A stretch of 64,000 bases of DNA from assembly GCF_001447785.1 (NCBI RefSeq), contig NW_015160208.1, positions 357,655 to 421,654 on the forward strand, given 5' to 3'. Both the position numbers and the translations under genes were made by a program. This document shows, piece after piece, positions 3,210-62,375 of the stretch; position 1 is the first letter of the stretch, and each line of letters begins with the position of its first letter. Source of the stretch: Gekko japonicus (lineage: Eukaryota). The notes beneath the pieces are model-generated. The model ran no database searches. It was not told the DNA's origin and worked only from the letters and a program-made list of their open reading frames with translations.

Positions 3210-4517
3210 TTATAACTCAATGAAAATGTTGAGACAGTGTGCAACTGCAATAAAAAAGGCCAACGCTATGCTGGGTATTATTAGGAAGGGAACTGAAAAC
3301 AAATCAGCCAGTATCATAATGCCCCTGTATAAATCAATGGTGCGACCTCATTTGGAATACTGTGTACAGTTCTGGTCACCACATCTCAAAAAGGATATTA
3401 TAGCATTGGAAAAAGTGCAGAAAAGGGCAACTAGAATGATAAAAGGGTTGGAACACTTTCCCTATGAAGAAAGGTTAAAGTGCTTGGGACTCTAGCTTGG
3501 AGAAATGATCGCTGAGCTGTGACATGATTGAGGTTTATAAGGTTATGCATGGGATAGAGCAGGTAGAGAAAGAAGTACTTTTCGCCCTTTCTCACAATAC
3601 AAGAACTTGTGGGCACTCAATGAAATTGCTGAGCAGTCGGGTTAGAACAGATAAAAGGAAGTACTTCTTCACTCAAAGAGTGATTAACACATGGAATTCA
3701 CTGCCACAGGAGGTGGTGGCAGTTACAAGCATGGACAGCTTCAAGAGGGAATTAGATAAGCATATGGAGCAGAGGTCCACCAGTGGCTATTAGCCACAAG
3801 GTATAGGTAGGAACTCTTAGGCTGGGGCAAGTGATGCTCTGTATTCTTGGTGCCTGGGGGGGGGGGGGCAGGGCCGGCTCACTCACTAGGGGTGCCAAAC
3901 TGGCGCACAGACACCCTGTTCTGGTTCTGCTGCGAACACTACTGAGTTTTAAACATGTTATGATCTTTCTGATGATACAAACACCAGTTCCACCAAAGAA
4001 CTTAGCCCTCTGGGCACAGAAGGGTCACTCCGCTGAGTCAAAGAAGAACCTAAGTAGGAGGGCTATTACATAAGGACACTCAAGTTGCAACTGACTTAAT
4101 GGCAACCCCAGCAAGGAACTGTCAAGGCAAGTGAGAAGCAGAGGTTTTTTGCGACTGCGAGTGCCTTTCTTTGTAGTCTTCCTTGGTGGAAGCCAGATGT
4201 GCAAAGCAGGCAAAGTTACAAAAGCGAGTGTTAAGAGCATGGGTGCCAGGGGAACGGGAGGTCCCGGGTACAGATCCAATTAATGGGTCCGAGCCATGGT
4301 GGGCGCAGGGGGGGCCGCCAGAAGGGATCCTTGCCTAGGGTGCAAAATAATCTGGGGCCGGCCCTGGGGGTGGGGCAACGGTGGGAGGGCTTCTTCTAAT
4401 GTCCTGGCCCCACTGCTGGACCTTCTGATGGCACCTGGTATTTTTGGCCACTGTGTGACAGAGTTGGACTAAATGGGCCATTGGCCGGATCCAACATTAG
4501 CTTCTCTTATGTTCTTG
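3210..4517 (+). mobile_element. 5'-truncated CR1 LINE interrupted by a hAT MITE
   Basis: CR1 ORF2 C-terminus (PLYKSMVRPHLEYCVQFWSP; WNSLPQEVV) and 3' UTR ending tcttatgttctt; same family as 26797-28431. Confidence 0.9.
3869..4366. mobile_element. hAT-type MITE inserted in the CR1 3' UTR
   Basis: TIRs CAGGGCCGGC...GCCGGCCCTG; 8-bp TSD gggggggg / ggggtggg. Confidence 0.75.
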
Positions 4518-26796: not shown

Positions 26797-28431
26797 GGTG
26801 ATATATGAAGTAAACAGGGAAATGGCTGAGAAGCTAAATGCATTTTTTGCCTCTGTCTTCACTGTGGAAGATGAGAAGTGCTTGCCTACTCCAGAACCAC
26901 TGATTTCAGGAGGGGTGTTGAAAGACCTGAGTCAGATTGAGGTACGTCGATACCGGGTAAATTGGTGGAAACCATTATTAAGGAAAGAATTAGTAGGCAC
27001 ATAGATGAACAAAACCTATTGAGGCAGACTCAACATGGGTTCTGTAAGGGAAGATCTTGTCTCACTAACCTGTTAGTGTTCTTTGAGGGGGTGAACAAAC
27101 ATGTGGACAAGGGGGATCCAATAGATATTATTTACCTTGACTTCCAGAAAGCTTTTGATAAAGTTCCTCATCAAAGGCTCCTAAGTAAGCTCAAAAATCA
27201 TGGGATAGAAGGACAAGTCCTTTTATGGATCAAAAACTGGCTAGTTCATAGAAAACAGAGAGTGAGTGTAGGTGGGCAATTTTCTCAGTGGAGGGTGGTA
27301 AGCAGTGGGGTACCGCAGGGATCAGTACTTGGTCCACTGCTTTTTAACTTGTTCATTAATGATTTGGAGATGGGAGTAAGCAGTGAAGTGGCTAAATTTG
27401 CGGATGATACAAAGTTGTTCGGGGTGGTGAAAACCAGTGAGGATTGTGAGGCACTCCAAGGGGATCTGTCAAGGATGGGCGAGTGGGCGTCAACATGGCA
27501 AATGGGGTTCAATGTGGCCAAGTGCAAGGTGATGCACATTGGAGCCAAAAATCCTAAATATAAATACACATTGATGGGGTCTGAACTGGCTGAGACTGAG
27601 CAAGAGAGAGATCTTGGAGTTGTAGTAGATAACTCACTGAAGATGTCGAGACAGTGTGTGACTGCAATAAAGAAGGCCAATGCTATGCTGGGGATTATTA
27701 GGAAGGGTATTGTAAACAGATCAGCCAATATCATAATGCCGCTATATAAATCAATGGTGCGACCTCATTTGGAATACTGTGTGCAGTTCTGGTCACCACA
27801 CCTTAAAAAGGATATTATAGCTTTGGAAAAAGTGCAGAAAAGGGCAACTCGAATGATAAAAGGGTTGGAACACTTTCCCTATGAGGAAAGGTTAAAGCGC
27901 TTAGGGCTCTTTAGCAAAGAGAAACGACGACTGAGGGGAGACATGATTGAGGTTTATAAGATTATGCATGGGATAGAGCAGGTAGAGAAAGAGGTACTTT
28001 TCTCCCTTTCTCAGAATACATGAACTCGTGGGCACTCAATGAAATTGCTGAGTGGTCGGGTTAGAACGGATAAAAGGAAGTACTTCTTCACCCAAAGAGT
28101 GATTAACACACGGAATTCACTGCCACAGGAAGTGGTGATGGCTACAAGCATGGACGGCTTCAAAAGGGAATTAGATAAGCATATGGAACAGAGGTCCATC
28201 AGTGGCTATTAGCCACAAGGTATAGGTTAGGGGCTCTGGGGCAAGTGATGCTCTGTCTTCTTGGTGCTTGGGGGGGTCAACAGTGGGAGGGCTTCTAATG
28301 TCCTGGCCCCACTGGTGGACCTCCTGATGGCACTGGTATTTCTGGCCACTGTGTGAAACAGAGTGTTGGACTGGATGGGTCTTTGGCCTGATCCAACATT
28401 GGCGTCTCTTATGTTCTCATGTTATGTTCTT
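26797..28431 (+). mobile_element. Young CR1 LINE, 5'-truncated and internally deleted, with an open 353-aa RT frame
   Basis: ORF 26962-28023 with QHGF..GRSCLTNL, YLDFQKAFDKV, GVPQGSVLGP and FADD; (TTATGTTC)-like tail; probable TSD aaaataca. Confidence 0.95.
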
Positions 28432-31429: not shown

Positions 31430-32196
31430 GTGAGAAGCAAACAGTTTGGGTCATTTTCAGTTTATTTGGAATTTATATTACATCATACATGCTGATTTTG
31501 CCAAATAAAATCTTTCTAGAAAGAACATTATATGACGTTAAGCCATGTTGTTGAGGTTGGGGGTGGGTTTTGTTGTTGTAACTGGAATAATTCATGAGCC
31601 CATGGGGAATTTTGTGGGACTGTAAATTGCTTGTGACATTGACAAAGTTTTTGCATGAATGGAATGTGGAGTGGTTTGAAATTTGTCTAGACACCTAAAT
31701 ATGTGGCAGAGTGATTAACAGCTTTCTCTTTCCTTAAATAGAATTTCCTTAATTTTTTGTGTTTTTTTAAAGCATCCAGCAATGGTAATGCCATAAAATC
31801 TTTGTAATTTGTTTTGCTATCCAGCTAAATGTATCAGATAGCTTTTCCATATATGTACCTTCTTTCAGTTGAAGCCTCATCTTCCATGGCCAAAGAAAGC
31901 AGGCTGTCACTCTGCATGCAGTTGGTTTCCATCTAAGACATAGCCGCTTCTCATCATGTTTCTCTTAGCCTTTTGGAGGATATCCTAATCTCGTTTTTCC
32001 CCTGTCCTTGTATTCCTTATTTTTGGTCTCTTTTACACTTGTTGCTGTTTCCCAAGCCATGTACAGTTTTATTGTGATCTCCAACTAGCTCCTATTCTGT
32101 TGCCAAAAATGAATAGAATAGTTTGTCTTTTCACCCGCTTCTCCTGTGATGAAATTGAGAGACAAAGCCTGAACATCAAACAAACAGTAAAACTAA

Positions 32197-32475
32197 AGAA
32201 GAGAAGAAGAGGAGATTGTTTATACCCCGCCCTTCACTTGGAGTCTCAGAGCGGCTTACAAACTCCTTTCCCTTCTCCTCCCCACAACAGACACCCTGTG
32301 AGGTGGGTGGGGCTGAGAGAACTCTGACAGAAACTGCTCTTTTTCAAGGACAGCTGTGCCAGAGCTTGTGACTGACCCAAGACCACATCAGCAGGTGCAA
32401 GTGGAGGAGTGGGGAATCAAACCCAGTTCTCCCAGATTAGAGTCTGGACATTTAACCACTACACCAAACTGGCTC
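32197..32475 (-). mobile_element. tRNA-derived SINE (Squam3-like)
   Basis: Head gagccagtttggtgtagtggttaa on the minus strand with a (TTC)n tail; at least five similar copies in the window. Confidence 0.8.
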
Positions 32476-38095: not shown

Positions 38096-38923
38096 GTCTG
38101 TAATTATTAGGGTCTTCTGGGGGTTGCCCCAAATGTGCAGGAAAATCTCTGCCCCCAGGTGCCCCAGATGTGCGGATTTAGATATCCTCACACAGGGGGC
38201 GCCTTGGCTATTAATATATAGATATCTGTGATCCTTGTGTCTGTGGGTCACGGGCTCCATCTCCCTGCTTCGATTTTTAAACAAACCCCTGAAGCAAAGC
38301 AGATTGTTAACCAAAGTTTGCAAATGTTTGTATGTGGATGAGATTTTTAAAGTAGTATTCAGTGGCATTATTAGGCAAGACAAGGGCAATTGAAATGTAG
38401 CTAAGTCTCAACCATACCATGAAGATATAACATTTTTTAAAAAACGTGCAGTCTGTTAAAAATAGGCTAGCACTTTACATACCTACTCTACTGCCCTTAT
38501 TAGGCTGTTCTATGTATTTTTTTAAATTTCTCATACTAGACCTCAATATAAAAATAGCAAGGAAGCAGTTTGATAGCTGCTGCTCAGTGCTGCATGAATA
38601 GAAGAACCCAGTTAGCCACTATAAAACCATGTAAGCAAGAAAATTCATTATATCCAGAGATTTATGACAGAAAAACAAAGAGTCTATCTAGATGTCCCCT
38701 GAGGAAGGTATTGTAGTTGCCACCATTTGAAGTTTTGAAAGCCAAGACAGAATCTAGCAAAGAGTCTGCTGTGTCTGAGCTAGAACCTCTGGGTTTGATG
38801 TAGAGATTCCTGAAGAAATGATCTGCTTTTAGTTTATAAGTGCCGTGACGTTTGGAGCAACCTACAAGTGGTATACATCTGCTCTTTCCCTCTTTCGTTG
38901 CTCAAAGATATTTTTTTCCCCAG

Positions 38924-39084
38924 GTGGTCCTGACAACCAAGTCCACTTTGAAGGCTACCAAGTATCCAATCAGTGCATGGCCCTAGTACGTGATGAGTGC
39001 CTGCTGCCATGCCGTGATGTTCCAGAGCTTGGCTATGCAAAAGAATCCAGCAGTGAGCAGTATGTGCCTGATGTGTTCTATAAG
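38924..39084 (+). CDS. NPLOC4: NPLOC4 exon 12 (GGPDNQVHFEGYQVSNQ...EQYVPDVFYK), GC donor
   Basis: cccag|GTGGT...TATAAG|gcaagt, 161 nt; phase 0 joins exon 13. Confidence 0.93.
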
Positions 39085-39533
39085 GCAAGTATTGATAACT
39101 TGCTTCTTTGTTTGCATGTGGCTCTTGCCTCTTTCTGAAAATAGCAGTGATATGAAGATGCTTTTCTCTCTGTGCTGCTTCTCTCTGGGAATGAAGTAAC
39201 TCTTGCAAGCTCTACCCATTGTTAAGGACAGGAGGTTCCTTCTGCCCTGAAGGAAAGTGTAATTTTGGAGAGTTCTAGAGTAGGTTTATCACTATAAGTC
39301 TCTTATCCCCTTTCTAATCTCAGCACAGGCAGCAGTCTTTCTGGCTATTTCTCTCCTCTTGCCGGCTTTGGAAAGTATCTATGTGACTTACAGTGCACAA
39401 GAGTAAGATGTAATCACTGTGGCATATCCCATGCATACAACGAATAGTTGGCCTTCATTGTTCGTGATGATTCACTTCTGGGTTGAACTAATTCTGGAGT
39501 GTCACTCAAACTGAGATTCCCAAGTGATACAGT

Positions 39534-39808
39534 AGAAGAAGAAGAGATTGGCTTTATACCCCGCCCTTCACTTGGAGTCTCAAAGCGGCTTACAAACTCC
39601 TTTCCCTTCCCCTCCCCACAACAGACACCCTGTGAGGTGGGTAGGGCTGAGAGAACTCTGACACAAACTGCTCTTTTTTCAAGGACAGCTGTGCCAGAGC
39701 TTGTGACTGACCCAAGGCCACATCAGCAGGTGCAAGTGGAGGAGTGGGGAATCAAACCCGGTTCTCCCAGATTAGAGTCCGCGCACTTAACCACTACACC
39801 AAACTGGT
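39534..39808 (-). mobile_element. tRNA-derived SINE (Squam3-like)
   Basis: Near-identical to 32197-32475 and 59951-60241. Confidence 0.8.
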
Positions 39809-41391
39809 TCTTCTGCAGATTTTCCAGCATCTCTCTCAAGTCTTTGAGAAACCCTTTGCGCACCTCAAGAGGGGTGTGTGTGTGTGATCAGAGTATCATA
39901 GTAAAAAGCTGCATGGCGGAAGAGCAGCTGGAGTGTGAATTCTTATATGCAAAACCTAGCAACAGTAGTATGTATGGAAACAAGGTGTTCATAAGTTATT
40001 GCAAAAGCTCCATGTCTGAGTTATTGCATAAGCTCCATTTCCTATTTCCCAAAGTGCTCCTATCATTCTCCAGGCTCTGCACAGCAACAGCATGAGCTCT
40101 GTGGTGAGCGGCTTTGTGCCTTCTAGCAAGTCTTCTGAATTAGTGATACTACTCCTGTTTGGCTGCGGCTGCTACCCCTCAGTTGACTTTTATTCCCTTG
40201 CTAATGTCTGGTGTGTCTTCTGCCCAATTATGTTTAGGTGAGATGTTCATTGAAGCAAAATGATGCAGTAATAAAAGCTGCAGGTTTCTGACAGCCAGTG
40301 AGAATGGCTTTTGTTGTGTGGAATATACTTACAAAGCTGCCTGGTGAGCAGTGTCAGTTGCTACAGAATATAAAGCAACAAAATGGAAAACAAGGATTAA
40401 GTCAGCCCCAGGGGGGGTGGTAAGGAGAAGAGAGGTTGTAAGAGCAAAATATGCAAGATAAGGCATCAGTATATCCAGATTCCAGCAAGGAGTCTGAGTT
40501 CTGTTTTGCTATCAGCATTTTTCTTGTTATTGAAAACTTTCAAGTTGTATGCTTTGTATGTTACGGTTTGTGGAGCTGAAAATTGGAGGGTTTTTTTCCT
40601 CCACTGTTCAACTTTTTTCACTTTCTAAACCATAAAAGTTTGAAATAGGAAAGGTAAAACTTTATTTGACATTTCTATGCCATTTTTGTACAAATGGTTT
40701 CAAAGCAGCTTACAATTAAAACATGTAACATAAAGGTATAGCGGTAATTCAGATTTGGAGAAAAATAATGTTATCACTGTGATAGTAATAACTCCCAAGG
40801 CACACGCAAGACATAGCCAACAAAATATAGACAGTGGGGTCAAACTAATTTTTCTCCAGGTTGGTTTCCCTTGAGCTCTGATGGGCTGTCAGCCCACCCT
40901 CAGCTTTCTGCCTGAAAGTCTCCTAAAATAAAGCCATGGCACAAAATAGATATCCTCCCCCCTTGTCTTTTCTGCTGAGGCAGGTCCTATTGCCCAGCTG
41001 GGGCAATTTCTCTCCATGCCTGATATCACTTTCAAGCCTAATTTGAGGATGGGCAACTGTTCAAACCTGCTCATCCATTTCTTGATGGACTTAGTTGCTC
41101 CAAGAGTAGGCTGATCTCAGGTATTACTTATGCTTGAGGTGGGGTGGGGTGGGGCTGATGTTGGAGATAGTGTAGTCCCCTGCCCTGTGCTGTCTTTCTT
41201 GGAGGCAAACGTGTTTTCCTTCAAAACAGCATTTTCCTCCTGTCTTTCAGCAGAGAGTACAGGGGCATAAGTGTTTCAAATACATTTACCTGCTGTAGTT
41301 AGCATTTGCCACTTGCATCGTACCTTGCCTTTGGGTAGCTAATACTCACCGCCCCTATCTACAGCTGAGGTGGCTAACTTCCAGAATGAGA

Positions 41392-42415
41392 AGAGTAAAA
41401 GTCCAGTAGCATCTTAAAGATTAACAAAACTTGTGGTGAGGTATGAGCTTTCGTGAGTCATTGCTCTTCAGGTATCTGGATATCTGAAGAAGTGATCAGT
41501 GACTCAGAAAAGCTCATACCTTACCACAATTTTTAAAATTTTTAATCCATTTAAAGGCATGGGATATTTATTTTGCAAGTAGTATCTACACATGCACTTT
41601 GTAGTCCACACCATCATGATGCAGCATAAAGTCACTATTTGACAATTTCCATAGGACAACAGCTTCCAACACAAAATACCACCATTTTGACAGTTACCAA
41701 TTTTTATATTGTTACAGAATATCATGATTAAAGGCATATGTTAACTTGCACCACAGCAAATCTTGGTTGCCTGCAAACAGTTTAGGAACTATGTACAAAA
41801 AAGCTGCATATCAAAGTTAAACATTTGCAAATTTTAGAGTACTACAATCTTGTCTAGCCACTTAAACTTGGGCAAATTCTTCTGGAATCAATGGATATGG
41901 TGTTCTTTTGGACAATTCTGCTTTACTGGAGCATGTGTCTTTTGAAGAGCATGGCACCTTATCTGCTGTATTGCAGAATGCTGTTCTTCAGACAGTGGCA
42001 AGGTCCCAATCCCAGCATGCTGCTGTATCTTCTGAACCAGCCTCAGCGTTTTATTGAGGGTAGCATTGATAGAACGCATTGACTCTTGCTGCTCGGCAGA
42101 AGTCCTGTCAAGCCGCTCACACAACATTTTGTAACATGAATTCATTACCAATAGCTGCTGTATGAGAGCCAGAGGATCTTCCTCTTGACATAATTCACCA
42201 GGGATCCCTTTCATCATTTCAAACTCCAGCATGCTCTGAATGCTGTCCATATCAGATTCGGCCACCTGGAACATCGCCTTGAGAGTGTTATCCACTGCCT
42301 CCATGTTGAATAATTGATGCTTACCACAAATTTTGTTAGTCTTTAAGGTGCTGCTGGACTCTTACTGTTTTCTACTGCTACAGACAGACTAACATGGCTG
42401 CCCATCTTGATCTAT
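41392..42415. mobile_element. Penelope-derived inverted (palindromic) terminal-repeat insertion, split by the SKA2 retrocopy
   Basis: Inverted hammerhead-bearing repeat at about 41395-41520, completed at 42320-42415; flanked by the 13-bp direct repeat ttccagaatgaga (41379-41391 and 42416-42428). Confidence 0.75.
41888..42304 (-). CDS. SKA2: Intronless SKA2-like (spindle and kinetochore-associated protein 2) retrocopy with intact 138-aa ORF, antisense in NPLOC4 intron 12
   Basis: MEAVDNTLKAMFQVAESDMDSIQSMLEFEM aligns by eye to SKA2 (human [30 protein letters not shown]), and similarity continues (EQQES..I.ATL.KT...VQK.Q, PLSEE). Strong Kozak aacATGG, AATAAA at 41572-41567, degenerate poly(A) and a 15-bp TSD. 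Confidence 0.85.
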   Translation of the reverse strand: MEAVDNTLKAMFQVAESDMDSIQSMLEFEMMKGIPGELCQEEDPLALIQQLLVMNSCYKMLCERLDRTSAEQQESMRSINATLNKTLRLVQKIQQHAGIGTLPLSEEQHSAIQQIRCHALQKTHAPVKQNCPKEHHIH

Positions 42416-42677
42416 TTCCAGAATGAGATTCAGCAGACGTTTCAACTGTCAGTCTCGTTTGTGTGTACTTGTGTGGGATGTAGCCATCACTAGTGTATTA
42501 TATGTAGAAGTGTGTACACATGGTACATGATTCATTGTGACAGCATGTTTCTGGAGCTCTCCATTCTTGTGACTGTCCGTGTAAGCTTTCAGTTATGGCT
42601 TGCAGCTCAAAATAACATGGTTTCTCCAACATTCTCTATTTTTGAATATAAGAATACTTCCTAATTTAAGTAGTCAG

Positions 42678-43084: not shown

Positions 43085-43360
43085 GTTTGGTGTAGTGGCT
43101 AAGTGTGCAGACTCCAATCTGGGATAACCAGGTTTGATTCCTCACTCCTCCACTTGCAGCTGCTGGATGACCTTGGGCAAGCCATAGTTCTGTCAGAGGT
43201 GTTCCTGAACCTCCTGAAAAGAGCAGTTTCTGTCAGAGCTCTCTCAGCCCCACCTACCTCACAGGGTGTCTGTTGTGGGGAGGGGAAAGGAAAGGAGTTT
43301 GTAAGCTGCTCTGAGACTCCGAGTGAAGGGTGGGGTATAAATCCAATCTCTTCTTCTTCT
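43085..43360 (+). mobile_element. tRNA-derived SINE (Squam3-like)
   Basis: gtttggtgtagtgg head and ttcttcttct tail. Confidence 0.8.
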
Positions 43361-46300
43361 CTTCTTATACCTGGCCTCTTTGGCTGTTGTTTTTGCTGCT
43401 GTCTATGTGGTTTTCCAGGGAAATCTTGTAGTTTCTGTATTCTAAAGAGTTTTTGTGGTACATTGGGAGTGGAATGTATTATGAGTGTTTAGCATTTGAG
43501 TGTTCTCCTTTGCTTCTTAATGTTTCTGATTTTACATGTTGCTAAAAGCTGTGGAATGCCATTGAGCCAGATAGCATGATAGTTCCAGTAGTTTTTTCCT
43601 TTGCAAATCACTAGATCCCATCATGCTGTGCTCCAGGTCTTAGTCATTCTGTGCATTTCAGGCTTTCTTCACTCCTCCATTTGCTTTTATGGCATTGTAA
43701 AGACAGTGGCAAGTTCAGTTAAGTCTGCTCTTATGAGCAATTTGTATCTCAGTACATGTGAAGGACCTGGCTTTAGACACTGGTATAAAATCTAAATTGG
43801 GTTTTTAGATAGGTGCAGTTGTTGCTGAAGAGAACGCATTACATAGATTAGATGATTTATTGGAGCAAAGGCTTTCACAGTTTGGTCTCTTAAAATGTAA
43901 TAGCCTTTTTGGTCAACTTATTACTCCAAACTGGCATAACTGTTTTGCTCCAGTAGAAGGAAGGATCTGCACTGGAGGGGTTTGGGGAGGAGTTGTATAT
44001 TGGTAAGCACTTGGTTGAAAGCGCTTTTAGAAATGTTGGTTAGAACCCAAGAAGCCAATGTTTGTGTAATGTGGAGTACACTTACCTCTCAAGGTTAGCA
44101 GCAGTTTAAATTACAGCAGAAATTGTGTGGTCTAGCTGGGTAGGAGAACAGCTGCTCTTTTGGCTCCTGCAGTCAGAGAGAAGGTGATGTATGTAAAATT
44201 AGAGGCTTGAAGCAGCGTCTATACAAAAGCCTGCTCATTGCATAAGGTATGTGGTCCTAGTATGCCGTTTCTTTTTACTCTTGGAAAACAGTTTGAGAAA
44301 TTTGTCTGAATTAGTACTGCTGTGCAAACAGGAGCCCGGCATTGAGATCAAAGCTACTCAGCTGTGAAAGACCGCTGACAGGAGTTGCTGGATGCATGAA
44401 TTCAGTGACTGAAGAAGTGCTTAAAGTTGGTGTGGGTTTTTTTACGGCCTCTTCTCTCTTGAGCTGCCTTTGGTGTGGTGTGCATCAGTGTAAGTTTGTG
44501 GGACAATGCCAGAGACTGCTGTACTCATGACAGCCTGTTCCTGTCATTGCTGGTTCCCATGAGAACAAGTGTGATTCATCTGTGTCTTAAATATCACAAA
44601 AACAGGAAAACCAACAGCGCCAGTTTTGCCTCAACTTCCTGTAGCCAGGAATTTTTTTTCGGAGGCCTCTGGCATTGTAAGTCTTTTATGTCTTTACCAC
44701 TCTCTTTATTTTGGCCTTTTAAAGACCAAATCAGCACTGGCTGCAAGGCTGCTAACTCCATCTGGGTGCTCAGTCCATGGTGTAAGAGAGTCCAGAGGCT
44801 TATCCTAAGGTGAAAAAAGAGGAGCATTTGGAACCAAATTATTCTGCTTAAATAGTTTTTTCTCACCCTAGGCATGGAACATAGGCAGGGAATTACTTCT
44901 CGTTTGAATACTTTTCTTGGTTAGAGGTGCCTGCTGGCTATTGCAATACTACAACCTTTGGATTAGTGTCATATCGCTGACACCTAACTCTAAGCAAACA
45001 TCCCTCCTCTTTTCAGAAAACTTGGAGGTGCAGTGTTACATTAAGAGACCTTTCTTCCCATTTCAAGCACCTTTTGATAATTCTGTCTCTTGTAAAATTG
45101 AAATGTATCTGGCCCTTGTGAGACTGATTGTTTTTGAAAGAGAATTTTTGGACTTGATCAGGCCCTGTGTTCATGTATAGTACCTCTTTCAAGACTAGAA
45201 ATGCTAGAAAAGAAAGATAACCCCTCTGATGGTCAAAGTGTCTATGAATTTCTGTTATTCCTTCTGGCAACATATCAATGGTAGCTATGATGCCACAGTC
45301 AGATGAAATCATTGAAAATGCACAAATTACTGAACTTTCTTGATAGTTGGCCTGTGTGTAGATTTGTAATCCGTGTTTATGGCAAGCAGTTCTGCAATTT
45401 TGCTTTTCAGGGGGTGTTACAGACGCCTCCTCTTCTTCCTGAAGCCATATCCATGCCAAGTCTGGCTTTCCATTATCTAGCTGTCATATTATTGGGCACC
45501 CTGTGGGCTCCAGGCTGCGGTGTGCTCTTGAAGTTGGTTGCTGCACTGCAGGACTCCAGCTCTGGACTTATTTCATGGATGTCTCAACATTCCATCAAAC
45601 GTAGCACACCAGAAAATAATCCAAAGGGGATCTGAATTTTATGGATCCTTTGAAGCATTCAAAATAGCTGAGATTTAGTACTTTTGCAGGACTCTGTTCT
45701 CTTGTTGACTTTAGAAAAATACCTACGATCTTAGCACTGATGCAAAATGTCATCTTTTTGCAGTGAGGTATGTTTTTATTGATGTTCTAATGTCCAGGAA
45801 ATTGCTTGGGGATGGTAAAGACTTCCTTGATTTCACTCGTGTTACAAAAGGACCTTTGCCTAGGAGGCTAACTGGGTAAGAGTTTTGCATTTGGCCTATT
45901 GCTTCATCCGCCTTTGGTATGCTGGTCTGAAGAACTGCCAGCTGCTCAGTTTTAGTTTGAGCACCAGGTCTCATTTACATAGTTGTATTCTGTGAAGTTA
46001 CTCCAGTGGCAATACGTTTGCTGGTCCCAGTTGGGATTGCTAATATCCTCATCTTCTAAACGAATAATATTCATGGCATTGTAGATTTATGAGTGTTTAA
46101 TATATAGCAGCTGTTTTATTTCTAGGTTATCTTTCCCCAACATTGTGGGCGCAGCTAACTTTCTGCAAAACTTCTCAGGAGCTTTTTTTTTTTTCAATGT
46201 CCACTTTTCCTTTGGGTTACGAAACATTTTCTACTTTCCAGTTTCAGCTAGCCTTCTACAGACTGTAGGGTTATTTAATTCTCTTTGCCATCTCTCTTCT

Positions 46301-49400: not shown

Positions 49401-51012
49401 TGGTAACTTCCTGGAGAGTTGCCTGGATCTGTTGTGGAAGCATTGTACCTCAGTAGTTCTCCTTCAGTGGGGGGAAGTCATCCAGAAAGTGGTTAGGTCA
49501 TGCCTCTGCTCGCTCGGATAGGCTATGCAAATTTCTTTATTGCGTGGCTCCTATTGGAGGGACCTAGGCTGATCTCTCCAGTTCTTGCATAGCCCTGCAC
49601 CTTCGGCTGGCGCAGCGGCCAGCAGCGCGGGAAAGAAAAAATGCCGCGGGAACAACACAGGGTGAGCTCATTCCGACCGGGGGGGGGGGGGACTTGGAAC
49701 AGCCCTAATAAAGGCTAAAAGGGACCGATTCAACCCCAGCCCAGTGGCCCGGAACCAGCCGCAGCCCAACCAGGACCCACTATAGACCCAACGGGGCTGC
49801 TCCAAGCCAGAACAGCAGCACGGGACCGGCTCCAGCCCAACCGGGACTGACCCAAGTACAGCCCAGCGGCCCTTGGGGAGCCATGGGTCCACCGGGAATG
49901 TGGGCACCGGCAGGCAAGCTTGTGCACCCCCCAAGGCCAAAAAGGTTGGAACGCCCTCTCCCACCAGCTGAGGATTCGGAGGGCGGGAAAAATGGCCGTG
50001 ATGGAGGTCCTCGTGGATCCTCAGTCCCTTACCCCAGAGGAATTGGGGGTCAGGCAATACTGGTCGGAAGGGGAAGCTACACCAGTGCTGGGCTGGCTGA
50101 ACGCAATGAACCGGTCAATCCCCCCTCCCCCCCCTCCCATGCAAGTGGTCCAAGAGGACAGCGTGAAGGCTGTGGATGGAGCCGGAGACTCTGAGAGATC
50201 GAGACCTACAGGCTTCCACTTCACCCCAAGAAAAGGGCACCAGCGGAAGCGGCATGCAGCTAGAAGCCGGCAGGAGACACCGCCGGGCGGGTCGAACAGA
50301 TGAAGCCAGTAAGTCCCCCCCACCCCCGCACCCAAAGGAGGCAGCCAAGTAATCGGCTGGCGGCACGGGAGACACAAAGGGCCTCATGTGGTGGGCCCAC
50401 TCCGGCGGTGGGGGAAGGCCTCGTTGGGCATAGTCCCACAGCAGGTGCGCCTGCACCTACCCAGGGCTACGGGGGCAGGTTGGCCCCTGCTGCAGAACCC
50501 ACAGCAGCCATGATTTCACCACCAGCTGCAGCCGCTGCAGGGATCACCAGCTGCAACCGCTGCAGGGCCCAGTCGGCTTGGCACCGCGCCCATTCAGTCC
50601 CTCAGAGTTTCAGCTGGGACCTTTCTGGATCTGGCCCTTAATAGGGCCCCCTGGACAGCACCACAAGGACTTAGGCAGCACAAGGGCTTCAGGGCGCTGG
50701 AAGACAGGGGGGTGGGGTGGCAGCCCCAGCACACACCCAACAGCACGTACAAACTAGGGCCCATCTTGGCTCTGGCCCTTAATGGGAGCGGCCTCGGGTG
50801 ACACCCAACGGCTTCAGGACACTGGAAGCCAGAGGGGTTAGGCAGCAGCCCCGGCACAACCCCAAAAACTGCGCATGCAAGCAAGGAGCTGGGGGAAGGT
50901 CATCCTCCAAGGGGCTCCTGCAGGAAGGGAAACCACACCGCTTACCTAGTTTTTCAGGCTGAAATTACATCTACCATCATTTCCTTGGGTGGAGATACAG
51001 AGAAGGAAGAAA

Positions 51013-51285
51013 GGGCTGCGGTGGATCAGTGGTTAAGATGCTGAACTGCGACCAGAAGGTCGGTAGTTGGGCAGTCAAGACCTGGGGGCGGCGTGATGGA
51101 ATGCACTTCTGTCTCTGGTCACAGCTCCTGCCAACATAGCTGTTCGAAAGCTAGAAATTGCAAGTAGAGACACAAGTACCGCTTCAAGGGAGAGGTGGCA
51201 GCGTTCCATGCACCTCGGCGTCTCGTCATGTCATACATGACCATGGAGAGGTCTTCGGACAGCGCTGGTTCTTCGACTTGGAAAC
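51013..51285 (+). mobile_element. Sauria SINE inside the DIRS element
   Basis: cagtggttaagatgctgaactgc head and cagctcctgccaac...gtcatacatgacc body. Confidence 0.8.
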
Positions 51286-51687
51286 GGATTCGACTGGTTT
51301 TAAATCTGAACTTTTCCAAAGGCTGTCGAACAAGGGCGTTCCACACTGGGTTACCAGTTGGGAAGTGGCAGAAAAAACTGTATCTTCAGTTTCTGCAAAG
51401 CGGGAATTCAGAGGCTTTAAGAAACCAGTCTAGGTGCAGACTTTTGCACCATTCCCCTGCCTTCCTTGATAACATCATCAGAGCAGAGTGGGCTGTTCCT
51501 AAAGGTGGGAGCTCCCCTTTGTCTGTCACAAAGCGTGTGGGATCCTCAACAGAGGAGACCAGGGGGGACCTAAAGGCCTTTAAGGTCCCTTGATCAGCGC
51601 CACTGCGGTGGCTCCGCTTTAAGGGGCAGTGCTCCCCAGGGCTGGGGAGGCCTTAAGATGCCGGGGACAGAGGGACTCAGGCAGCAA

Positions 51688-52010
51688 GGGCCACGTTGGC
51701 TCAGTGGTTAAGGCACCAATCGGCAGTCCAGTAGGTCGGTAGATGGCGGCTCAAGACCCGAGTGCTCCCATCCCTGGTACCAGCTCCTGCCAGCATAGCA
51801 GTGCGAAAGCAAGGGGTTGCAAGTAGATAAATAGGTGCCGCTTCGGTGGGAAGGTAACAGCATCCCGTGCGCTTCGGAGTGCAGTCATGCCAGCCACATG
51901 ACAATGGAAACGTCTTTGGACAGCGCTACCTCTTTGGCTTGGGATTGAAGAGGAGCACCGCAACCCTAGAGTCGGGTTCATCCGGCTTTCATGCAATGGA
52001 AACCTTTATC
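51688..52010 (+). mobile_element. Sauria SINE inside the DIRS element
   Basis: ggctcagtggttaagg head and gcaaccctagagtcgg...accttt tail. Confidence 0.8.
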
Positions 52011-54788
52011 ACACTGTCAAGGAGTAATGAGCTACAGAGTAGCCCTCAGGCAGGTTTCTGTTCAGGACTCAAAATCGACGAGGTGTTAGCTGAGACGAAG
52101 ATGAAGAAGGCAATGGCATCACCTTCCCGCCACGGGGGAAACACCACAGGCATGCGATTCCATTCATGGGTTTCTCACCCCAGGTAGAGGAAGAGAAGGG
52201 AGACCCTTCAAGTTCAGTGTGAGATCCAACGCCTAACAAGTCTCATCCTTCAGGATTGAATAGGGCTGCCATAACCGAAAACAATAAGCATGGCTATCAA
52301 AATTGGCGGCCGGCTCCTGGCCTTCGCAAGGGTCGGGAGTTTACTCCACAAGACACCAGTGGGCCTTTGTCAGCCCCAAGACTAAAGGCAAGGCAACTTT
52401 ACTGCAAAGCCAAGTCGGCACCTGAAGGGCATAGGTGCCATAGAAGAGGTCCCCAAGGAACAGCACTGCAGAGGAGGGGGCACAGTGGTCTTTGTCATTC
52501 TAAAGCAGTCATGGGACTGGAGAGTCCTACTGAACTTGTGAGGTCGCAACAACAACAACAACAACAAAAAAGAAAGAAAAGGGAACATTCTGGACGAAAT
52601 CCCCGCACCATATCCTGCAGATACTACAGCAAGGGGAACTTCCTGGCCTCCCTGGACTCAAGGAGGATTATATGCATATCCTGGTGCACCCAGACTCCAG
52701 CATTTCCAGTACAAGGCTTTCCTTTGGCCCCCTCCTCAGCACCCAGAGTCTTTACCAGGATCTGGGATGCTATGGTAGCATCACTACACCTAGAAGGGAA
52801 ACTCCACATACACAAGGGTGGCAGCGTCCCGTGCACGCACAGGCCCCTCATCAACAGAGCCTTTCATCCCTACACAGGATCTTGCGCACCTGGGGGGGCA
52901 GCCTGAACACACATCAGGCCACCGTCTCTCTGCCAGAGGGAATAAAGCTAAACATATGGGACGGTGTACGGAGTGTCCAAGATAACAGCAGTCCAGCAGC
53001 ACCTGCCAGTCCTGCAGGGCCTACTAAAATCAATCCTAGATACGATCCCGGGGGCAGGACTCATGAGGGAGTTTGAATGATGGGCAGTACCATCAAACTT
53101 GGGGCAAGACCATCAGCTTCCTCCATTCTCAGCAACAAGGCGGCCCACAGCATCGCCTGCCTTTGCAAAACAGGCTGAGTGGTAGGGACCTGAATCCAGG
53201 AGAAGGGGCCTGGAGCGAGGAAGTCTTTACTCAGATCACACAAGTTTTCAGGACACCTGTGCGGGACCTACTAGCTAGCTCAATGAACTATCAGGTTGAG
53301 AGGTTCCTATCCGGATGCCAGGATCCAGCAGCGGGGCCAGAAGGCAGCCAGTACTCCTTCCTTCCCCCAGTTCTGTTAAGAAGGACGTTCAACAAGATCA
53401 CAAGGGACAGGGCAGAAGTGGCGTTCATGACCGCCCACCAGCAAAGAGGACCATGGGTTCTTGGATCCAGTATACCAGGAAGCTACCTCTGAGAACAGAT
53501 CAGCCGCACCTAGGGCCCATCCTACACCTAGAACCAGCATGGTTACAGTTGACTGCACAGAAATTGTACCAGGCAAGGGGGCCATCAACACAGCGCCCCT
53601 GCAGTCACCCATGGAAGACATTTCAAAATGGGCCTCCGCCAATGGAGTACAACCCTTGGCACCTCCAGTCAGACACAGGTTCCCGACATGGAGACAAAGG
53701 TCCCTGACACGGAGCCTTCTCCAAGGTGCTGCACACATTGACTAAAGCCGATTGTATTACCTCCTTCTGCTCCAATCTGAGTACCCTACAGTACAAACCT
53801 GGCACAACGGGGCGTACGGAGGAGCTCTCTATATTTACCTCCCTTTCACAGGTCAGACCCGCTGTTTGTATAAGAGGGCCCCGTAGACCATAGCGGTCTA
53901 CTGGATTGGACAGTGTATGGCCAAGGCCTACGATGGGGCAAGTACGGGCACTACCAGGTCAGGTGACTGCGCACTCCACAGGAGCATTCTCCAAGCGAGC
54001 AACAGCAGATGGATTCTGCAGAGAGGGTACCTGGGCCTTCTTGTCCACATTGGTGAGGCATTACAGGAGGGTCAGGCGGTGTCCGCTGACGTAGCCTTCG
54101 GCATACCAGTATTACAACAAGTTTTGGAGAGATAAGTCACCCACCCTAGAAGAGAAGCTTGGGTACAGCTAACCACTTCCTGGATGACTTCCCCCCACTG
54201 CAGGAGAACGTACATTGGACCTTACCTGAAGGTTCTTTCTCTTCAGTGTGGGAGAAGTCATCCACATCCCACCCTAGGATGGAAAACTACTAACTCTATT
54301 CAAGCCAAGGGTGGCACGTAGAACACGGAGTGATCGCTCCACTTAATAAATGCAGAAAGAAAGAAGGAGCACAAGAACTGAAATGAAAACAACACAGGGC
54401 TTGGACATAACTGGAGAGGTCAGCCTAGGTCCCTCCAATAGGAGCCACACAATAAAAAAATTTGCATAGCCTATTCAAGCGAGCAGAGGCGTGACCTAAC
54501 CACTTCCTGGATGACTTCTCCCCCACTGAAGAGAAAGAACCTTCAGGTAAGGTCCAGTGTACCATTTCACTTCATCGTGGCTGGCCCCTACTAAAGGGTG
54601 ATAATAGGGGACTGCTCATGGCCCAGGGATGAAACTTTGTTGACATGTTTTTGGTTCTTTGGCTACTAGAATAACAAAACATTCGAGCATATTTGAATCT
54701 TCAACTTTGAGGAAGTCTAAAGCTCTCCCCATTTTGGACCTTGGTTAGAATTTTCATCAGGGTTGAGGAGTGAACTATAAAGAGTCTG

Positions 54789-58634: not shown

Positions 58635-58677
58635 TGACCTCTGAGGAAGGCCTATTTGGCCGAAACGTGTAAGGTCA
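58635..58677 (+). ncRNA. Minimal type I hammerhead ribozyme motif in a Penelope-like pLTR
   Basis: TGACCT-CTGAGGA-A-GGCC(tattt)GGCC-GAAA-C(gt)G-TA-AGGTCA: perfect 6-bp stem I, 4-bp stem II, intact core, GUA cleavage triplet. Confidence 0.7.
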
Positions 58678-59308: not shown

Positions 59309-59499
59309 TTCCAGTCAGCCAGCATCAAGTGGGTCACTATGCTAGATTGGCCAGCTGTATGATATATGAGGGTCAAGTTAAATAGCTCCTGTTTTTGTGT
59401 TACAGTTTTGTTTTGTTGTTGGTAAAAAGCCTACTTAGTTATAATAGAAAAAAGTATTTCATAGAACTGTGAAACATTATTTTTTCTACAGAAGCATTC

Positions 59500-59793
59500 C
59501 CAGTTTGGTGTAGTGGTTAGGAGCGTGGACTCTAATCTGGGAGAATCAGGTTTGATTCCCCATTCCTCCACATGCAGCTGCTGGTGTGACCTTGGGTCAG
59601 TCATAAGTTCTTTCAGAACTGTTCTCTCAAGGGCAGTTCTCGAGAGAGCTCTCTCAGCCCCACCTACCTCACAGAGTGTCTGTTGTGGGGACGGAAAGGG
59701 AAAGGGATCGTAAGCTGCTCTGAGACTCCTTCAGGTAACAAAGGGCAGGGTATAAATCCAATCTCCTCGTCGTCCTCGTCGTCTTCATCTTCT
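59500..59793 (+). mobile_element. tRNA-derived SINE (Squam3-like)
   Basis: ccagtttggtgtagtggttagg head; tail mutated to (TCG/TCC)n. Confidence 0.8.
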
Positions 59794-59950
59794 GGGGTGG
59801 GCTGACTTCTGTGTTGCATGGTCCATTTTTTTAAAAAATAAAAATTTAAATCCCTGTGCGCCACTGATGTGTATTAAGTTTTTGAAGCATTTCAACAGAT
59901 AAAGCATAACTGATATGTTTTAAGTAAGCCCAAGTGTGCTCTCTTGTTTA

Positions 59951-60241
59951 AGAGAAGAAGAAGAAGAGAAGAAGAGATTGGATTTATACCCCGCCCTTCA
60001 CTTGGAGTCTCAGAGCGGCTTACAAACTTCTTTCCCTTCCCCTCCCCACAACAGACACCCTGTGAGGTGGGTGGGGCTGAGAGAACTCTGACACAAACTG
60101 CTCTTTTTCAAGGACAGCTGTGCCAGAGCTTGTGACTGACCCAAGGTCACATCAGCAGGTGCAAGTGGAGGAGTGGGGAACCAAACCCGGTTCTCCCAGA
60201 TTAGAGTCCGCACACTTAACCACTACACCAAACTGGCTCTC
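59951..60241 (-). mobile_element. tRNA-derived SINE (Squam3-like)
   Basis: Reverse orientation relative to 59500-59793; near-identical to 39534-39808. Confidence 0.8.
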
Positions 60242-60477
60242 GAGGACAAGTGCCTCGCTGGATAAGGTCCAACTCTGCTCAGGACAGCCTATTCCTTGGG
60301 AGAATCCAATCCTGTCTTCCAGCAGGTACCTTTGCTGGATCAGATCCACTAAAATTTTGTCAGTGGTTTCATCCATAGGCAGACCACAATCTACCTTCTG
60401 CCCATTCTGGTCTGCTGTTCCTTAGTGGCTGTGCATTAATCGTTCTGTCTAACCGGTGGACTTCTGTTCATTTCCAG

Positions 60478-60549
60478 GATATAGACAAGTTCGGCAATGA
60501 GATCACTCAGCTAGCCCGTCCGCTCCCTGTCGAGTACCTAATAATTGAT
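60478..60549 (+). CDS. NPLOC4: NPLOC4 exon 13 (DIDKFGNEITQLARPLPVEYLIID)
   Basis: ttccag|GAT...GAT|gtaagt, 72 nt. Confidence 0.95.
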
Positions 60550-62375
60550 GTAAGTATCTACTGTGCTTGTCTGTTTCTTTTGCAGAAGAAAACATAAATG
60601 GAGCAAAATTCATCCCAAGGCTAAAACTGGAACTCTCACATTATTCTTTACTGTGCCCCGCTGTTAGCAGGCAGCTTGTGACTTGTTTGCAGGTTTTCCT
60701 TTGGGGTAGTGGCAGTATGAAACCTGAGGGAAGCATTTGGCTTTCGAGTTAGGCACTGTTTGGAGCATCTCCCACGGCTTCTATGAAATGATGTTTATCC
60801 ATTAGATGAGTAGAAACTGTCACACCCCCGCCCCCACAGAGATGCTGGCGATTACATCATCAGGAGCTTGTTAGTAAGTGTCTGCTGCGCCTTTCGCAGG
60901 AGTTTTGTAGTGACTGAGCCAGACAGGACTTGAATGCCTGTGGCATCTCTGCTGCCATCAGCCGAGTAAAATAACTTGGGTAAAATAGCTCACCTGCAGT
61001 ACAGTGGCAGGCTCCCTTCCACAGGGAAGTGGGCTCATTTCTGGCATCAAGTAAGGATGGGGTATGGTACCTCTCTGTGTATCAACGACCTTACCTTAGT
61101 TAATAAAAACATTGTAAATATAAACACATCTGTTAAGTTAGCATTAAAATGATGAAGGGGACAAAGCATTTTGCAGGATAGAAGAGTATAATACAACTGA
61201 GTTTACCAGCAGAAGATCAGATGGGGAGAGTAGCCACAGTAGTCTAAAATAATTGAATCCAAAGAGATCTGGTGCAGCAGCCTGTAGTGGGGGCTACAGA
61301 GTTTCCCTTGTTCTTCCTCCTTTCCCATTTAGTCACTTAAATTGCAGGCATAGTTAATTGGGGCTGAAGGCATTTCATGTCCAATTCATGCAGTTGAGGT
61401 ATTTTGCCTTTTGCAGCAGTGGTGGCCATTGTGTTGAGCCTGCCAATGTTCCATTTCAGCTGATAGCCCTGAAACATATTTATTACCCAAGCCGCAAAGG
61501 CATCTGTTTTTTGACTACCTGGGGTATAATTAAGATGAAAACAGATTGACAGAGCATGCATTTAGGAGGAGTTGAAAGAGAGATTAGAAACTGAATTTCT
61601 GAAGCTTCTTTACAATGTCTCACCTTTCTATTATTCTATTATAACTTGCACTGTTTCTGCACCTTTGGTGTCCGTTACAAATTGTGCCAATTCCTGATTG
61701 AAAAGCCCTTTGCTGGCAAGGCCTCCAGCTCAATAGAATCATGGTTGGGATATGACAGTGTTTCTCTGTGAAATGCAACAGCCTGTAATATTAGTCTTCC
61801 TCAGGCAACTTGTGTGGGATCAGCAAGCATGGTGTTCTTCCCGCTGAAAGAGAGTAGGAATACAAAAAGCTGGCAAAGCACCCAAACTGCCCGGAAGAAG
61901 GATGGTGGCTATGTGTCTGAATTTTAATATTTGGCAATGCTTTTTAGAGTCTGCATGGCCACTCTGGGAGGAGAGGAGCTTAAACTCCTCATGGGTTCAG
62001 CCCCAGCAATTGTAGCAGCATCTGTCTAAGGGAGGGTTGCTCTTGACTCCCTTGTGCAAGCCTGTATAATCCTGAGTAGCCCTAACTGTTTGAAATAGAA
62101 TTTCCTGTCGCAGTCTACTCTTTTCACCATGCATGTTGAAGCATCACTTGGGGAAAAGAGATGAGGATAAAATGTATGTAAATGAGAGTAAATGTGAGAA
62201 GCCTTAAGAAACATCACCTCTTGGTCTCCCACTGCCCTTCCCAGCTGGGTCCCTAGCTCTCAGCCAGGGAAAGCATTTGACTGAAGTCTACATCTGCCAC
62301 ATACCTGGCCATGGTTTCTTACACTTCATGGGCTATGCTTTGAATAGTCACCTTTTGTCTTATTTTTTTTTAAAG

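What the first reader, a model, noticed from the sequence alone, without database searches (positions are those of the whole stretch)
41520..42334. Intact antisense SKA2-like retrogene hidden in NPLOC4 intron 12
Seen in the sequence: an uninterrupted 138-codon minus-strand ORF with strong Kozak context, a 15-nt 5' leader, about 345 nt of 3' UTR, AATAAA (41572-41567), a degenerate poly(A) and a 15-bp TSD (minus strand aaaatttgtggtaag at 42334-42320 versus aaaaattgtggtaag at 41534-41520). Established: the protein resembles SKA2 of the Ska kinetochore-microtubule complex, whose vertebrate gene has introns, so this is an mRNA-derived copy. Inference: it has many amino-acid changes relative to recalled SKA2 sequences but no stop or frameshift, while the TSDs are nearly intact. 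That fits a young but fast-evolving functional retrogene (for example a germline or meiotic Ska subunit variant) or a copy of an already divergent paralogue.
Basis: partly seen in the sequence, partly recalled or inferred. Interest (0 to 1): 0.85.

Follow-up and report, generated by a model that had tools for sequence, protein, structure and literature searches.

The report
SKA2 processed pseudogene in NPLOC4 intron
This is a real intronless copy of the kinetochore gene SKA2, pasted backwards into an intron of NPLOC4 in a Gekko-type gecko, but it changes like unconstrained DNA and the two RNA runs checked show no reads over its coding part, so it is most likely an ordinary processed pseudogene whose reading frame is still open by luck.

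Summary
There is a 138-codon minus-strand ORF (41888-42304) with a Pfam SKA2 match of 6.6e-19. It has a 15-nt leader, a 3' UTR of about 343 nt, AATAAA, a very short A-rich tail and a 15-bp target-site duplication (14/15).

It lies antisense in a 21-kb intron of an NPL4-family gene (NPLOC4). I did not verify the intron number.

DNA contigs of the same species hold the parental SKA2 as four separate exon pieces. The window copy runs straight across all four junctions, so it is a retrocopy.

A second species (organism B) holds a contiguous intronless copy that includes the same flank. The insertion is therefore older than that split, not young.

The functional reading is not supported:
- Sixteen amino-acid changes are unique to this copy, against two in Gekko japonicus SKA2 (P=0.001). 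Half of the sixteen hit residues that are identical from human to gecko.
- Polarised nucleotide changes on the retrocopy lineage are 9 non-synonymous to 1-3 synonymous (omega about 1 or above). The parent lineage shows 2 to 4-6.
- The CDS has changed as fast as its own UTR.
- In one RNA run with parental depth of about 75-290, no read carries the retrocopy's letters. A second run has a depth of about one read, in the UTR only.
- There is no CpG island upstream.
- Simulation gives a 5-15% chance of an intact ORF under neutrality.

Verdict: ordinary processed pseudogene, about 0.8.

The parts
42320..42334 (-). Upstream copy of the 15-bp target-site duplication (aaaatttgtggtaag)
   Evidence: D1: 14/15 identical to 41520-41534, spacing 800. 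table 5: joints skipping 800 nt in other copies of the host repeat.
42305..42319 (-). 15-nt 5' leader of the retrocopy (remnant of the SKA2 5' UTR)
   Evidence: Parental RNA reads still align in bin 42286-42316 (table 2).
41888..42304 (-). Intact 138-codon SKA2-derived ORF including the stop. It is continuous across the four parental exon junctions (near 42272, 42181, 42006 and 41917).
   Evidence: Parental exon pieces are table 8 (records 4, 5, 6, 2 and X6 record 11).
41545..41887 (-). 3' UTR copied from the SKA2 mRNA, with AATAAA at 41572-41567
   Evidence: It aligns to the parent's last-exon contig with 36 differences and 2 gaps over 310 nt (record 2).
41535..41544 (-). Degenerate remnant of the poly(A) tail (taaaaatttt)
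   Evidence: read directly from the sequence.
41520..41534 (-). Downstream copy of the target-site duplication (aaaaattgtggtaag)
   Evidence: D1.
41392..41519 (.). Host palindromic high-copy repeat, the part downstream of the retrocopy. It includes the intact second arm with the unoccupied target sequence at 41420-41451.
   Evidence: I1/I2. Word depth runs to the hundreds of thousands here (to millions on the other flank) in DNA runs of organisms A and B (table 2).
42335..42415 (.). Host palindromic repeat, the part upstream of the retrocopy. The whole repeat is bracketed by a perfect 13-bp direct repeat at 41379-41391 / 42416-42428.
   Evidence: D3 and I1.
38833..39135 (+). Open frame containing the NPLOC4 exon that precedes the host intron (...GGPDNQVHFEGYQ...VPDVFYK)
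   Evidence: PF05021 NPL4 8e-16, profile 127-180..
60379..60594 (+). Open frame containing the NPLOC4 exon that follows the host intron (DIDKFGNEITQLARPLPVEYLIID)
   Evidence: PF05021 NPL4 1.5e-05, profile 175-206..

Best explanation
A spliced, polyadenylated SKA2 mRNA that used the proximal AATAAA was reverse-transcribed and inserted by a LINE-type target-primed mechanism. It landed in one arm of a high-copy palindromic repeat inside a 21-kb intron of NPLOC4, in antisense orientation, and duplicated 15 bp of target. This happened before the species of the window (organism A, a close relative of Gekko japonicus) split from a second species (organism B). Since then the copy has drifted without detectable constraint and without a promoter of its own. 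It is a processed pseudogene, and its short 138-codon frame has not yet been hit by a stop or a frameshift. Shown: the retrocopy anatomy, the intron-containing parent, the presence in a second species, a substitution pattern compatible with neutrality, and the absence of retrocopy reads over the CDS in two RNA runs. Inferred: the LINE machinery, the lack of function, and an age of very roughly tens of millions of years.
For: Anatomy. Parent with introns: in the DNA contigs of organism A the matching exons lie on separate contigs flanked by unrelated sequence (records 2, 4, 5, 6). In organism B two exons lie about 1040 nt apart on one contig (record 11). The window copy and exact-match contigs (records 1 and 3, 0 differences) are continuous. 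Shared insertion: organism B record 9 is one 687-nt contig covering 41482-42177, from the flank through the UTR and across two exon junctions, with 45 substitutions. Protein rates: 16 residues are unique to this ORF, against 2 for G. japonicus SKA2, with four other geckos as outgroups (Tajima chi2 10.9, P=0.001). Eight of the 16 (V5D, E9K, L19M, N43D, S52L, K55N, R57C, E100G) hit residues that are identical in human SKA2. Nucleotide changes in codons 55-138, polarised with organism B: the retrocopy lineage has 9 non-synonymous and 1-3 synonymous, the parent lineage 2 and 4-6. Parental-strength constraint (omega 0.11) is rejected at P<=0.0014, and omega 1 fits. Rates: the retrocopy-lineage CDS rate of 4.0-4.8% is not lower than its UTR rate of about 3.2-3.6%. 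Expression: in RNA run X16 the parent has a summed depth of about 75-290 over most of the CDS (about 47 at the first codons), 0 reads are 99% or more alike, and at the listed diagnostic places of the CDS only single stray reads lack the parental letter. In X14 a depth of about one read carries retrocopy letters, only in 41571-41843. Promoter: the upstream 1.5 kb has CpG o/e of 0.02-0.21. Chance: neutral simulation leaves the ORF intact with probability 0.05-0.15 at the observed divergence. The scan's unchecked notes for this genome list 17 retrocopy findings in 722 windows, so some intact short ones are expected.
Against: The frame, the ATG and the original stop are all intact after 4-5% lineage divergence (chance about 0.05-0.15). 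No indel is listed in the part of organism B's copy that could be seen (codons 43-138). Changes specific to the window's lineage are denser in the CDS (8 in 252 nt, 7 of them non-synonymous) than in the UTR (1-2 in 262 nt; Fisher P 0.02-0.17 depending on counting). That could hint at positive selection rather than drift. Three small runs of organism A (X3-X5) hold 12-20% of the copy's words, more than the roughly 4% of words I could show to be shared with the parental mRNA (a floor: 42141-42304 was not counted). The tissues of the two RNA runs are unknown, so a testis- or meiosis-restricted transcript is not excluded.
Confidence: 0.8

Rival explanations
1. A functional, fast-evolving SKA2 retrogene. 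The copy would be expressed in a tissue not sampled here (for example the germline) and would encode a variant Ska-complex subunit kept by selection, possibly positive selection, in at least two Gekko species.
For: The ORF is intact with a strong start context. The copy is retained in organism B with no indel listed in codons 43-138. The window-lineage N:S of 7:1 and the excess of CDS over UTR changes are compatible with omega above 1. Runs X3-X5 hold more of its words than the parent explains.
Against: No test shows constraint. Omega does not differ from 1. Half of the replacements hit residues conserved from human to gecko, including R57C, E100G and K55N. The listed diagnostic places of the CDS show no retrocopy reads in two RNA runs where the parent is well covered. 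There is no CpG island, and only repeats lie upstream. An intact frame is expected by chance in 5-15% of such copies. The excess of CDS changes shrinks to P=0.17 when the three adjacent changes at 41976-41978 count as one event.
Confidence: 0.12
2. A non-coding by-product with incidental activity. The copy would be transcribed only as part of the NPLOC4 pre-mRNA (as antisense SKA2 sequence), or would act as a source of antisense or small RNA against SKA2, with no protein made.
For: It lies inside a transcribed intron in antisense orientation. The depth of about one read with retrocopy letters in X14, confined to the UTR part, is what intronic pre-mRNA background would give.
Against: The level is trace and the library is unstranded, because parental reads fall on both directions. 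At 7-12% divergence from the parent, any antisense pairing would be imperfect. No evidence for regulation was sought or found.
Confidence: 0.05
3. An assembly artefact or cDNA contamination rather than a real genomic insertion.
For: None beyond the general possibility for intronless copies.
Against: A DNA contig of run X1 crosses the junction from the flank into the copy (41486-41873) with 0 differences. A second species holds the copy joined to the same flank. A TSD and a split host repeat are present.
Confidence: 0.01

Closest known systems
Processed pseudogenes / retrocopies made by LINE (L1-type) target-primed reverse transcription
   Same: It lacks all parental introns, starts near the mRNA 5' end, and ends about 20 nt after AATAAA in an A-rich remnant. 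It has a 15-bp TSD, sits at an unrelated locus inside another gene's intron, has no promoter of its own, and shows a substitution pattern compatible with neutrality.
   Different: The frame is still open. The poly(A) remnant is unusually short (five A's). The target was one arm of a palindromic high-copy repeat.
SKA2 (FAM33A), subunit of the Ska1-Ska2-Ska3 kinetochore-microtubule complex; Pfam PF16740; human structure 4AJ5
   Same: The SKA2 domain matches over its full length (residues 3-111). The length of 138 aa equals gecko SKA2. It is 86% identical to Gekko japonicus SKA2.
   Different: It has 16 private replacements, eight of them at positions identical from human to gecko. It is intronless and sits at a non-syntenic site, and no expression was seen. 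It derives from the SKA2 gene but is not an orthologue of it.
Functional retrogenes (for example testis-expressed retrogenes of mammals and Drosophila)
   Same: An intact ORF retained in more than one species.
   Different: The defining evidence is missing here: transcription, dN/dS below 1 on the retrogene branch, and a recruited promoter.

Membership tests
Processed retrocopy of a spliced mRNA | Continuous across positions where the parental gene has introns | tested here: met
   table 8. The parent's exons match 42181-42272, 42007-42183, 41918-42005 and 41564-41873 on separate contigs. In organism B two exons lie about 1040 nt apart. The window is continuous across all of them.
Processed retrocopy of a spliced mRNA | Polyadenylation signal followed by an A-rich tail at the 3' end | tested here: met
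   AATAAA is at 41572-41567, with an A-run at 41543-41539. The tail is short and degenerate.
Processed retrocopy of a spliced mRNA | Target-site duplication flanking exactly the inserted cDNA | tested here: met
   A 15-bp repeat, 14/15 identical, spacing 800. Empty paralogous sites skip exactly 800 nt (table 5). The unoccupied target sequence is present in the other arm of the repeat.
SKA2 family (PF16740) | Profile match above Pfam's gathering score | tested here: met
   68.2 bits against a cutoff of 30.1, E 6.6e-19. Human SKA2 chain 4aj5_K matches at 1.6e-19.
Functional retrogene | Purifying selection on the retrocopy branch (dN/dS clearly below 1) | tested here: not met
   In codons 55-138 the retrocopy lineage has 9 N to 1-3 S (omega about 0.8-2.4). 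Omega 0.11 is rejected (P<=0.0014), omega 1 fits, and omega 0.3-0.5 is not excluded. The protein relative-rate test gives 16 against 2, P=0.001.
Functional retrogene | Transcription of the copy itself | tested here: inconclusive
   Two RNA runs were laid. X16 has no retrocopy read at a summed parental depth of about 75-290 over most of the CDS. X14 has a depth of about one read, in the UTR only. The tissues are unknown and the libraries are unstranded.
Functional retrogene | Intact ORF in orthologous copies of other species | tested here: inconclusive
   Organism B's contig shows no listed indel in codons 43-138, but its private substitutions were not displayed and codons 1-42 are not on the contig.
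Functional retrogene | A promoter upstream of the insertion | tested here: not met
   CpG o/e is 0.02-0.21 and GC is 0.39-0.45 in the 1.5 kb upstream. The immediate upstream sequence is the host repeat. This is only a proxy: non-CpG promoters were not tested.
NPLOC4 (host gene) | zf-NPL4 and NPL4 domains encoded by colinear exons on the + strand on both sides of the insertion | tested here: met
   nine of the ten pieces hit zf-NPL4 or NPL4, with profile positions rising from 12.8 kb to 62.5 kb. The intron number was not verified.

The most novel reading that the evidence does not exclude
The copy is a lineage-specific SKA2 retrogene, kept open in at least two Gekko species and evolving under positive selection. 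It would be a variant Ska-complex subunit expressed in a tissue that the two RNA runs did not sample.
Probability: 0.1. Interest if true: 0.45.

Novelty: new member of a known kind. Interest (0 to 1): 0.12.

Why it matters
As a processed pseudogene it matters little. It is one more dated retroposition marker shared by at least two Gekko species, and an example of LINE-type mRNA retroposition in geckos. It also shows that a short intact frame is weak evidence for function. Only if the copy proved to be expressed and selected would it bear on how kinetochore subunits diversify.

Tried and rejected
The parental locus in G. japonicus could therefore not be fetched, and no full parental CDS was available.
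- The nucleotide differences in 42141-42304, and the changes private to organism B, could not be read. A full-length dN/dS and the state of B's ORF are therefore missing.
- Rfam found no family at gathering score in the whole window. At E<=1 around the insertion it found only sub-threshold miRNA-like hairpin matches. The 'hammerhead' label of the host palindrome from note s1-821691 is not confirmed here.
- Literature searches for SKA2 with retrogene, and for retrocopies with gecko, gave nothing relevant.
- 'Copy of a divergent paralogue' is rejected. The only relatives found are the ordinary gecko SKA2 proteins, and the parental reads and contigs match them.
- The raw pairwise pN/pS of 0.42 between copy and parent is rejected as evidence of constraint. 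Polarisation with organism B shows that most synonymous changes lie on the parent's branch.
- I did not run structure or complex prediction, because a fold would not separate a drifting copy from a functional one.

Full report
**What is there.**
The minus strand of 41520-42334 reads as follows:
- a 15-bp direct repeat;
- a 15-nt leader;
- ATG in the context ttcaacATGG;
- a 138-codon ORF (42304-41888);
- about 343 nt of trailer, with AATAAA at 41572-41567;
- five A's followed by tttt;
- the second copy of the direct repeat (14/15 identical, spacing 800).

The ORF matches Pfam SKA2 over its whole length (E 6.6e-19, 68.2 bits, cutoff 30.1). It also matches human SKA2 of the Ska core complex, 4aj5_K (1.6e-19). 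The best database relatives are the 138-aa SKA2 proteins of Gekko japonicus (86%), Heteronotia binoei (86%), Paroedura picta (82%), Euleptes europaea (80%) and Eublepharis macularius (80%). The 138-aa length and much of the distance from mammalian SKA2 are therefore simply the gecko form of the protein.

**Surroundings.**
Ten + strand open frames were tested and nine hit zf-NPL4 or NPL4, with profile positions rising from 12.8 kb to 62.5 kb. The copy lies between the exon in 38833-39135 (profile 127-180) and the exon in 60379-60594 (profile 175-206). That places it antisense in an intron of about 21 kb of the NPLOC4 orthologue. I could not verify that this is intron 12.

The insertion sits in one arm of a palindromic repeat (arms 41388-41440 / 42320-42372 and 41426-41466 / 41494-41534). 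That repeat is itself bracketed by a perfect 13-bp direct repeat at 41379-41391 / 42416-42428. The intact arm carries the unoccupied target sequence. The repeat is very abundant, with word depths up to millions in two species. Many of its other copies join the two flanks and skip exactly 800 nt, with up to 15 letters that fit both sides (tables 2 and 5). This confirms that the 15 bp are a true target-site duplication.

Rfam gives no hammerhead, or any other family, here.

**It is a retrocopy, and not a young one.**
Four runs were laid on 41480-42400 at 80% likeness.

In the DNA contigs of organism A (the species of the window) two kinds of sequence appear:
- exact copies (records 1 and 3, 0 differences), one of which crosses the flank junction;
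- a second, diverged sequence broken into pieces that each continue into unrelated DNA: 42181-42272 (6 differences), 42007-42183 (11), 41918-42005 (9) and 41564-41873 (36 differences plus 2 gaps).

The diverged pieces are the exons of the parental SKA2 gene. In organism B two of them lie about 1040 nt apart on one contig. The window runs straight across all four junctions (near codons 11, 42, 100 and 130).

Organism B also has one 687-nt contig that covers 41482-42177 without a break. It runs from the host-repeat flank through the UTR and across two exon junctions, with 45 substitutions and 17 gap letters. It also shares derived letters with the window copy. The same insertion therefore exists in a second species and predates their split.

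The parent of organism A has M88 and G127, like G. japonicus, but E63 instead of D63. Organism A is therefore G. japonicus-like but perhaps not that species. Run names are coded.

**Is the frame maintained?**

*Proteins.* With four other geckos as outgroups, 16 replacements are private to this ORF and 2 to G. japonicus SKA2 (chi2 10.9, P=0.001). Eight of the 16 (V5D, E9K, L19M, N43D, S52L, K55N, R57C, E100G) fall on residues that are identical in human SKA2. The changes do not avoid conserved positions.

*Nucleotides.* For codons 55-138 the list of differences to parent A is complete, and organism B's two sequences polarise them.

| Lineage | Non-synonymous | Synonymous | Omega |
|---|---|---|---|
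| Retrocopy | 9 | 1-3 | about 0.8-2.4 |
| Parent | 2 | 4-6 | about 0.1 |

Constraint of parental strength is rejected (P<=0.0014). Omega of 1 fits. Weak constraint (omega 0.3-0.5) cannot be excluded with so few events. The raw pairwise pN/pS of 0.42 is the mixture of these two branches.

*Rate.* The retrocopy-lineage rate in the CDS (4.0-4.8%) is not lower than in its own UTR (about 3.2-3.6%).

*Chance.* Simulating neutral substitutions, with indels at 0.08-0.12 per substitution, leaves the ATG and frame intact in 5-15% of trials at 4.5-5.5% divergence. The indel ratio agrees with the three indels seen between the two species' UTRs. The scan's own unchecked notes list 17 retrocopy findings in 722 windows of this genome, one of them another 'intact' one. 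An open 138-codon frame is therefore unremarkable.

**Expression.**
Both RNA libraries are unstranded, because parental reads fall on both directions.
- In X16 the parental mRNA has a summed depth of about 75-290 over most of the CDS, falling to about 47 at the first codons. No read is 99% or more alike, and at the listed diagnostic places of the CDS only single stray reads lack the parental letter.
- In X14 a depth of about one read carries the retrocopy's letters, from 41571 to 41843 only, and none carries them in the CDS. This is what background from the NPLOC4 pre-mRNA would give.

The 1.5 kb upstream has CpG o/e of 0.02-0.21 and no GC rise.

Two caveats apply. The tissues are unknown. Three small runs (X3-X5) hold 12-20% of the copy's words, while about 4% of the words could be shown to be shared with the parental mRNA (a floor, since 42141-42304 was not counted). 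Their library type is only guessed, and their size (130-140 M letters, several samples of one study) would also fit reduced-representation DNA.

**Residual oddity.**
After the split from organism B, the window's lineage shows 8 changes in 252 nt of CDS (7 non-synonymous, including three adjacent bases at 41976-41978). It shows 1-2 changes in 262 nt of UTR. Fisher P is 0.02-0.06, or 0.17 if the triplet counts as one event. This is the only hint in favour of positive selection, and it is weak.

**Verdict.**
The 'young', 'paralogue-derived' and 'functional' readings are not supported. The best explanation is a processed SKA2 pseudogene shared by at least two Gekko species, with a frame that is still open by chance (about 0.8). 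A functional retrogene remains possible (about 0.1-0.12).

**Limits.**
Full-length dN/dS and the state of organism B's ORF remain open.

Noticed in passing
window 41379-41519 and 42335-42428: The host of the retrocopy is a palindromic high-copy repeat with its own perfect 13-bp direct repeat (TTCCAGAATGAGA). Its word depth runs to hundreds of thousands and millions in DNA runs of two species, and it is abundant in RNA reads too. It contains CTGAAGAG...CGAAAGC motifs, but Rfam gave no hammerhead at E<=1.
   Followed up: partly
window 41564-41572 (parental SKA2 of organism A, seen through reads): In the parental gene of organism A the proximal signal reads ACTAAA instead of AATAAA (41571 T>G on +). 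135 RNA reads run on past 41564 into different sequence, so the living gene now mostly uses a more distal poly(A) site. Organism B keeps AATAAA.
   Followed up: no
runs X3-X5: Three small runs of the same species (130-140 M letters, one study, library type not on record) hold 12-20% of the retrocopy's 31-mers, more than the parental mRNA can explain. They could be RNA or reduced-representation DNA.
   Followed up: no
window 26941-28020 (+): A 360-aa open frame with reverse-transcriptase-like motifs (…YLDFQKAFDKVPHQRL…) lies in an NPLOC4 intron, probably a LINE fragment. A similar tail (…RVRTDKRKYFFTQRVINT.NSLPQEVV…) recurs at 3509-3790 and 28024-28209.
   Followed up: no
window 32159-32368, 39487-40092, 43103-43489, 59465-59710, 59914-60422: A repeated element, present in both orientations, translates to the same peptide-like string (…SAPPTSQGVCCGE.KGKEFVS.SETPSEG.GIN…). 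It is presumably a SINE or other interspersed repeat. One copy lies about 800 nt upstream of the retrocopy.
   Followed up: no
window 49700-53750 (+): A block of about 4 kb carries many long overlapping open frames (up to 227 aa) rich in P, G and R. It is unlike the rest of the intron and was not identified.
   Followed up: no
window 58635-58677: Another note places a hammerhead ribozyme motif here. Rfam at gathering thresholds reports no family anywhere in the window.
   Followed up: partly
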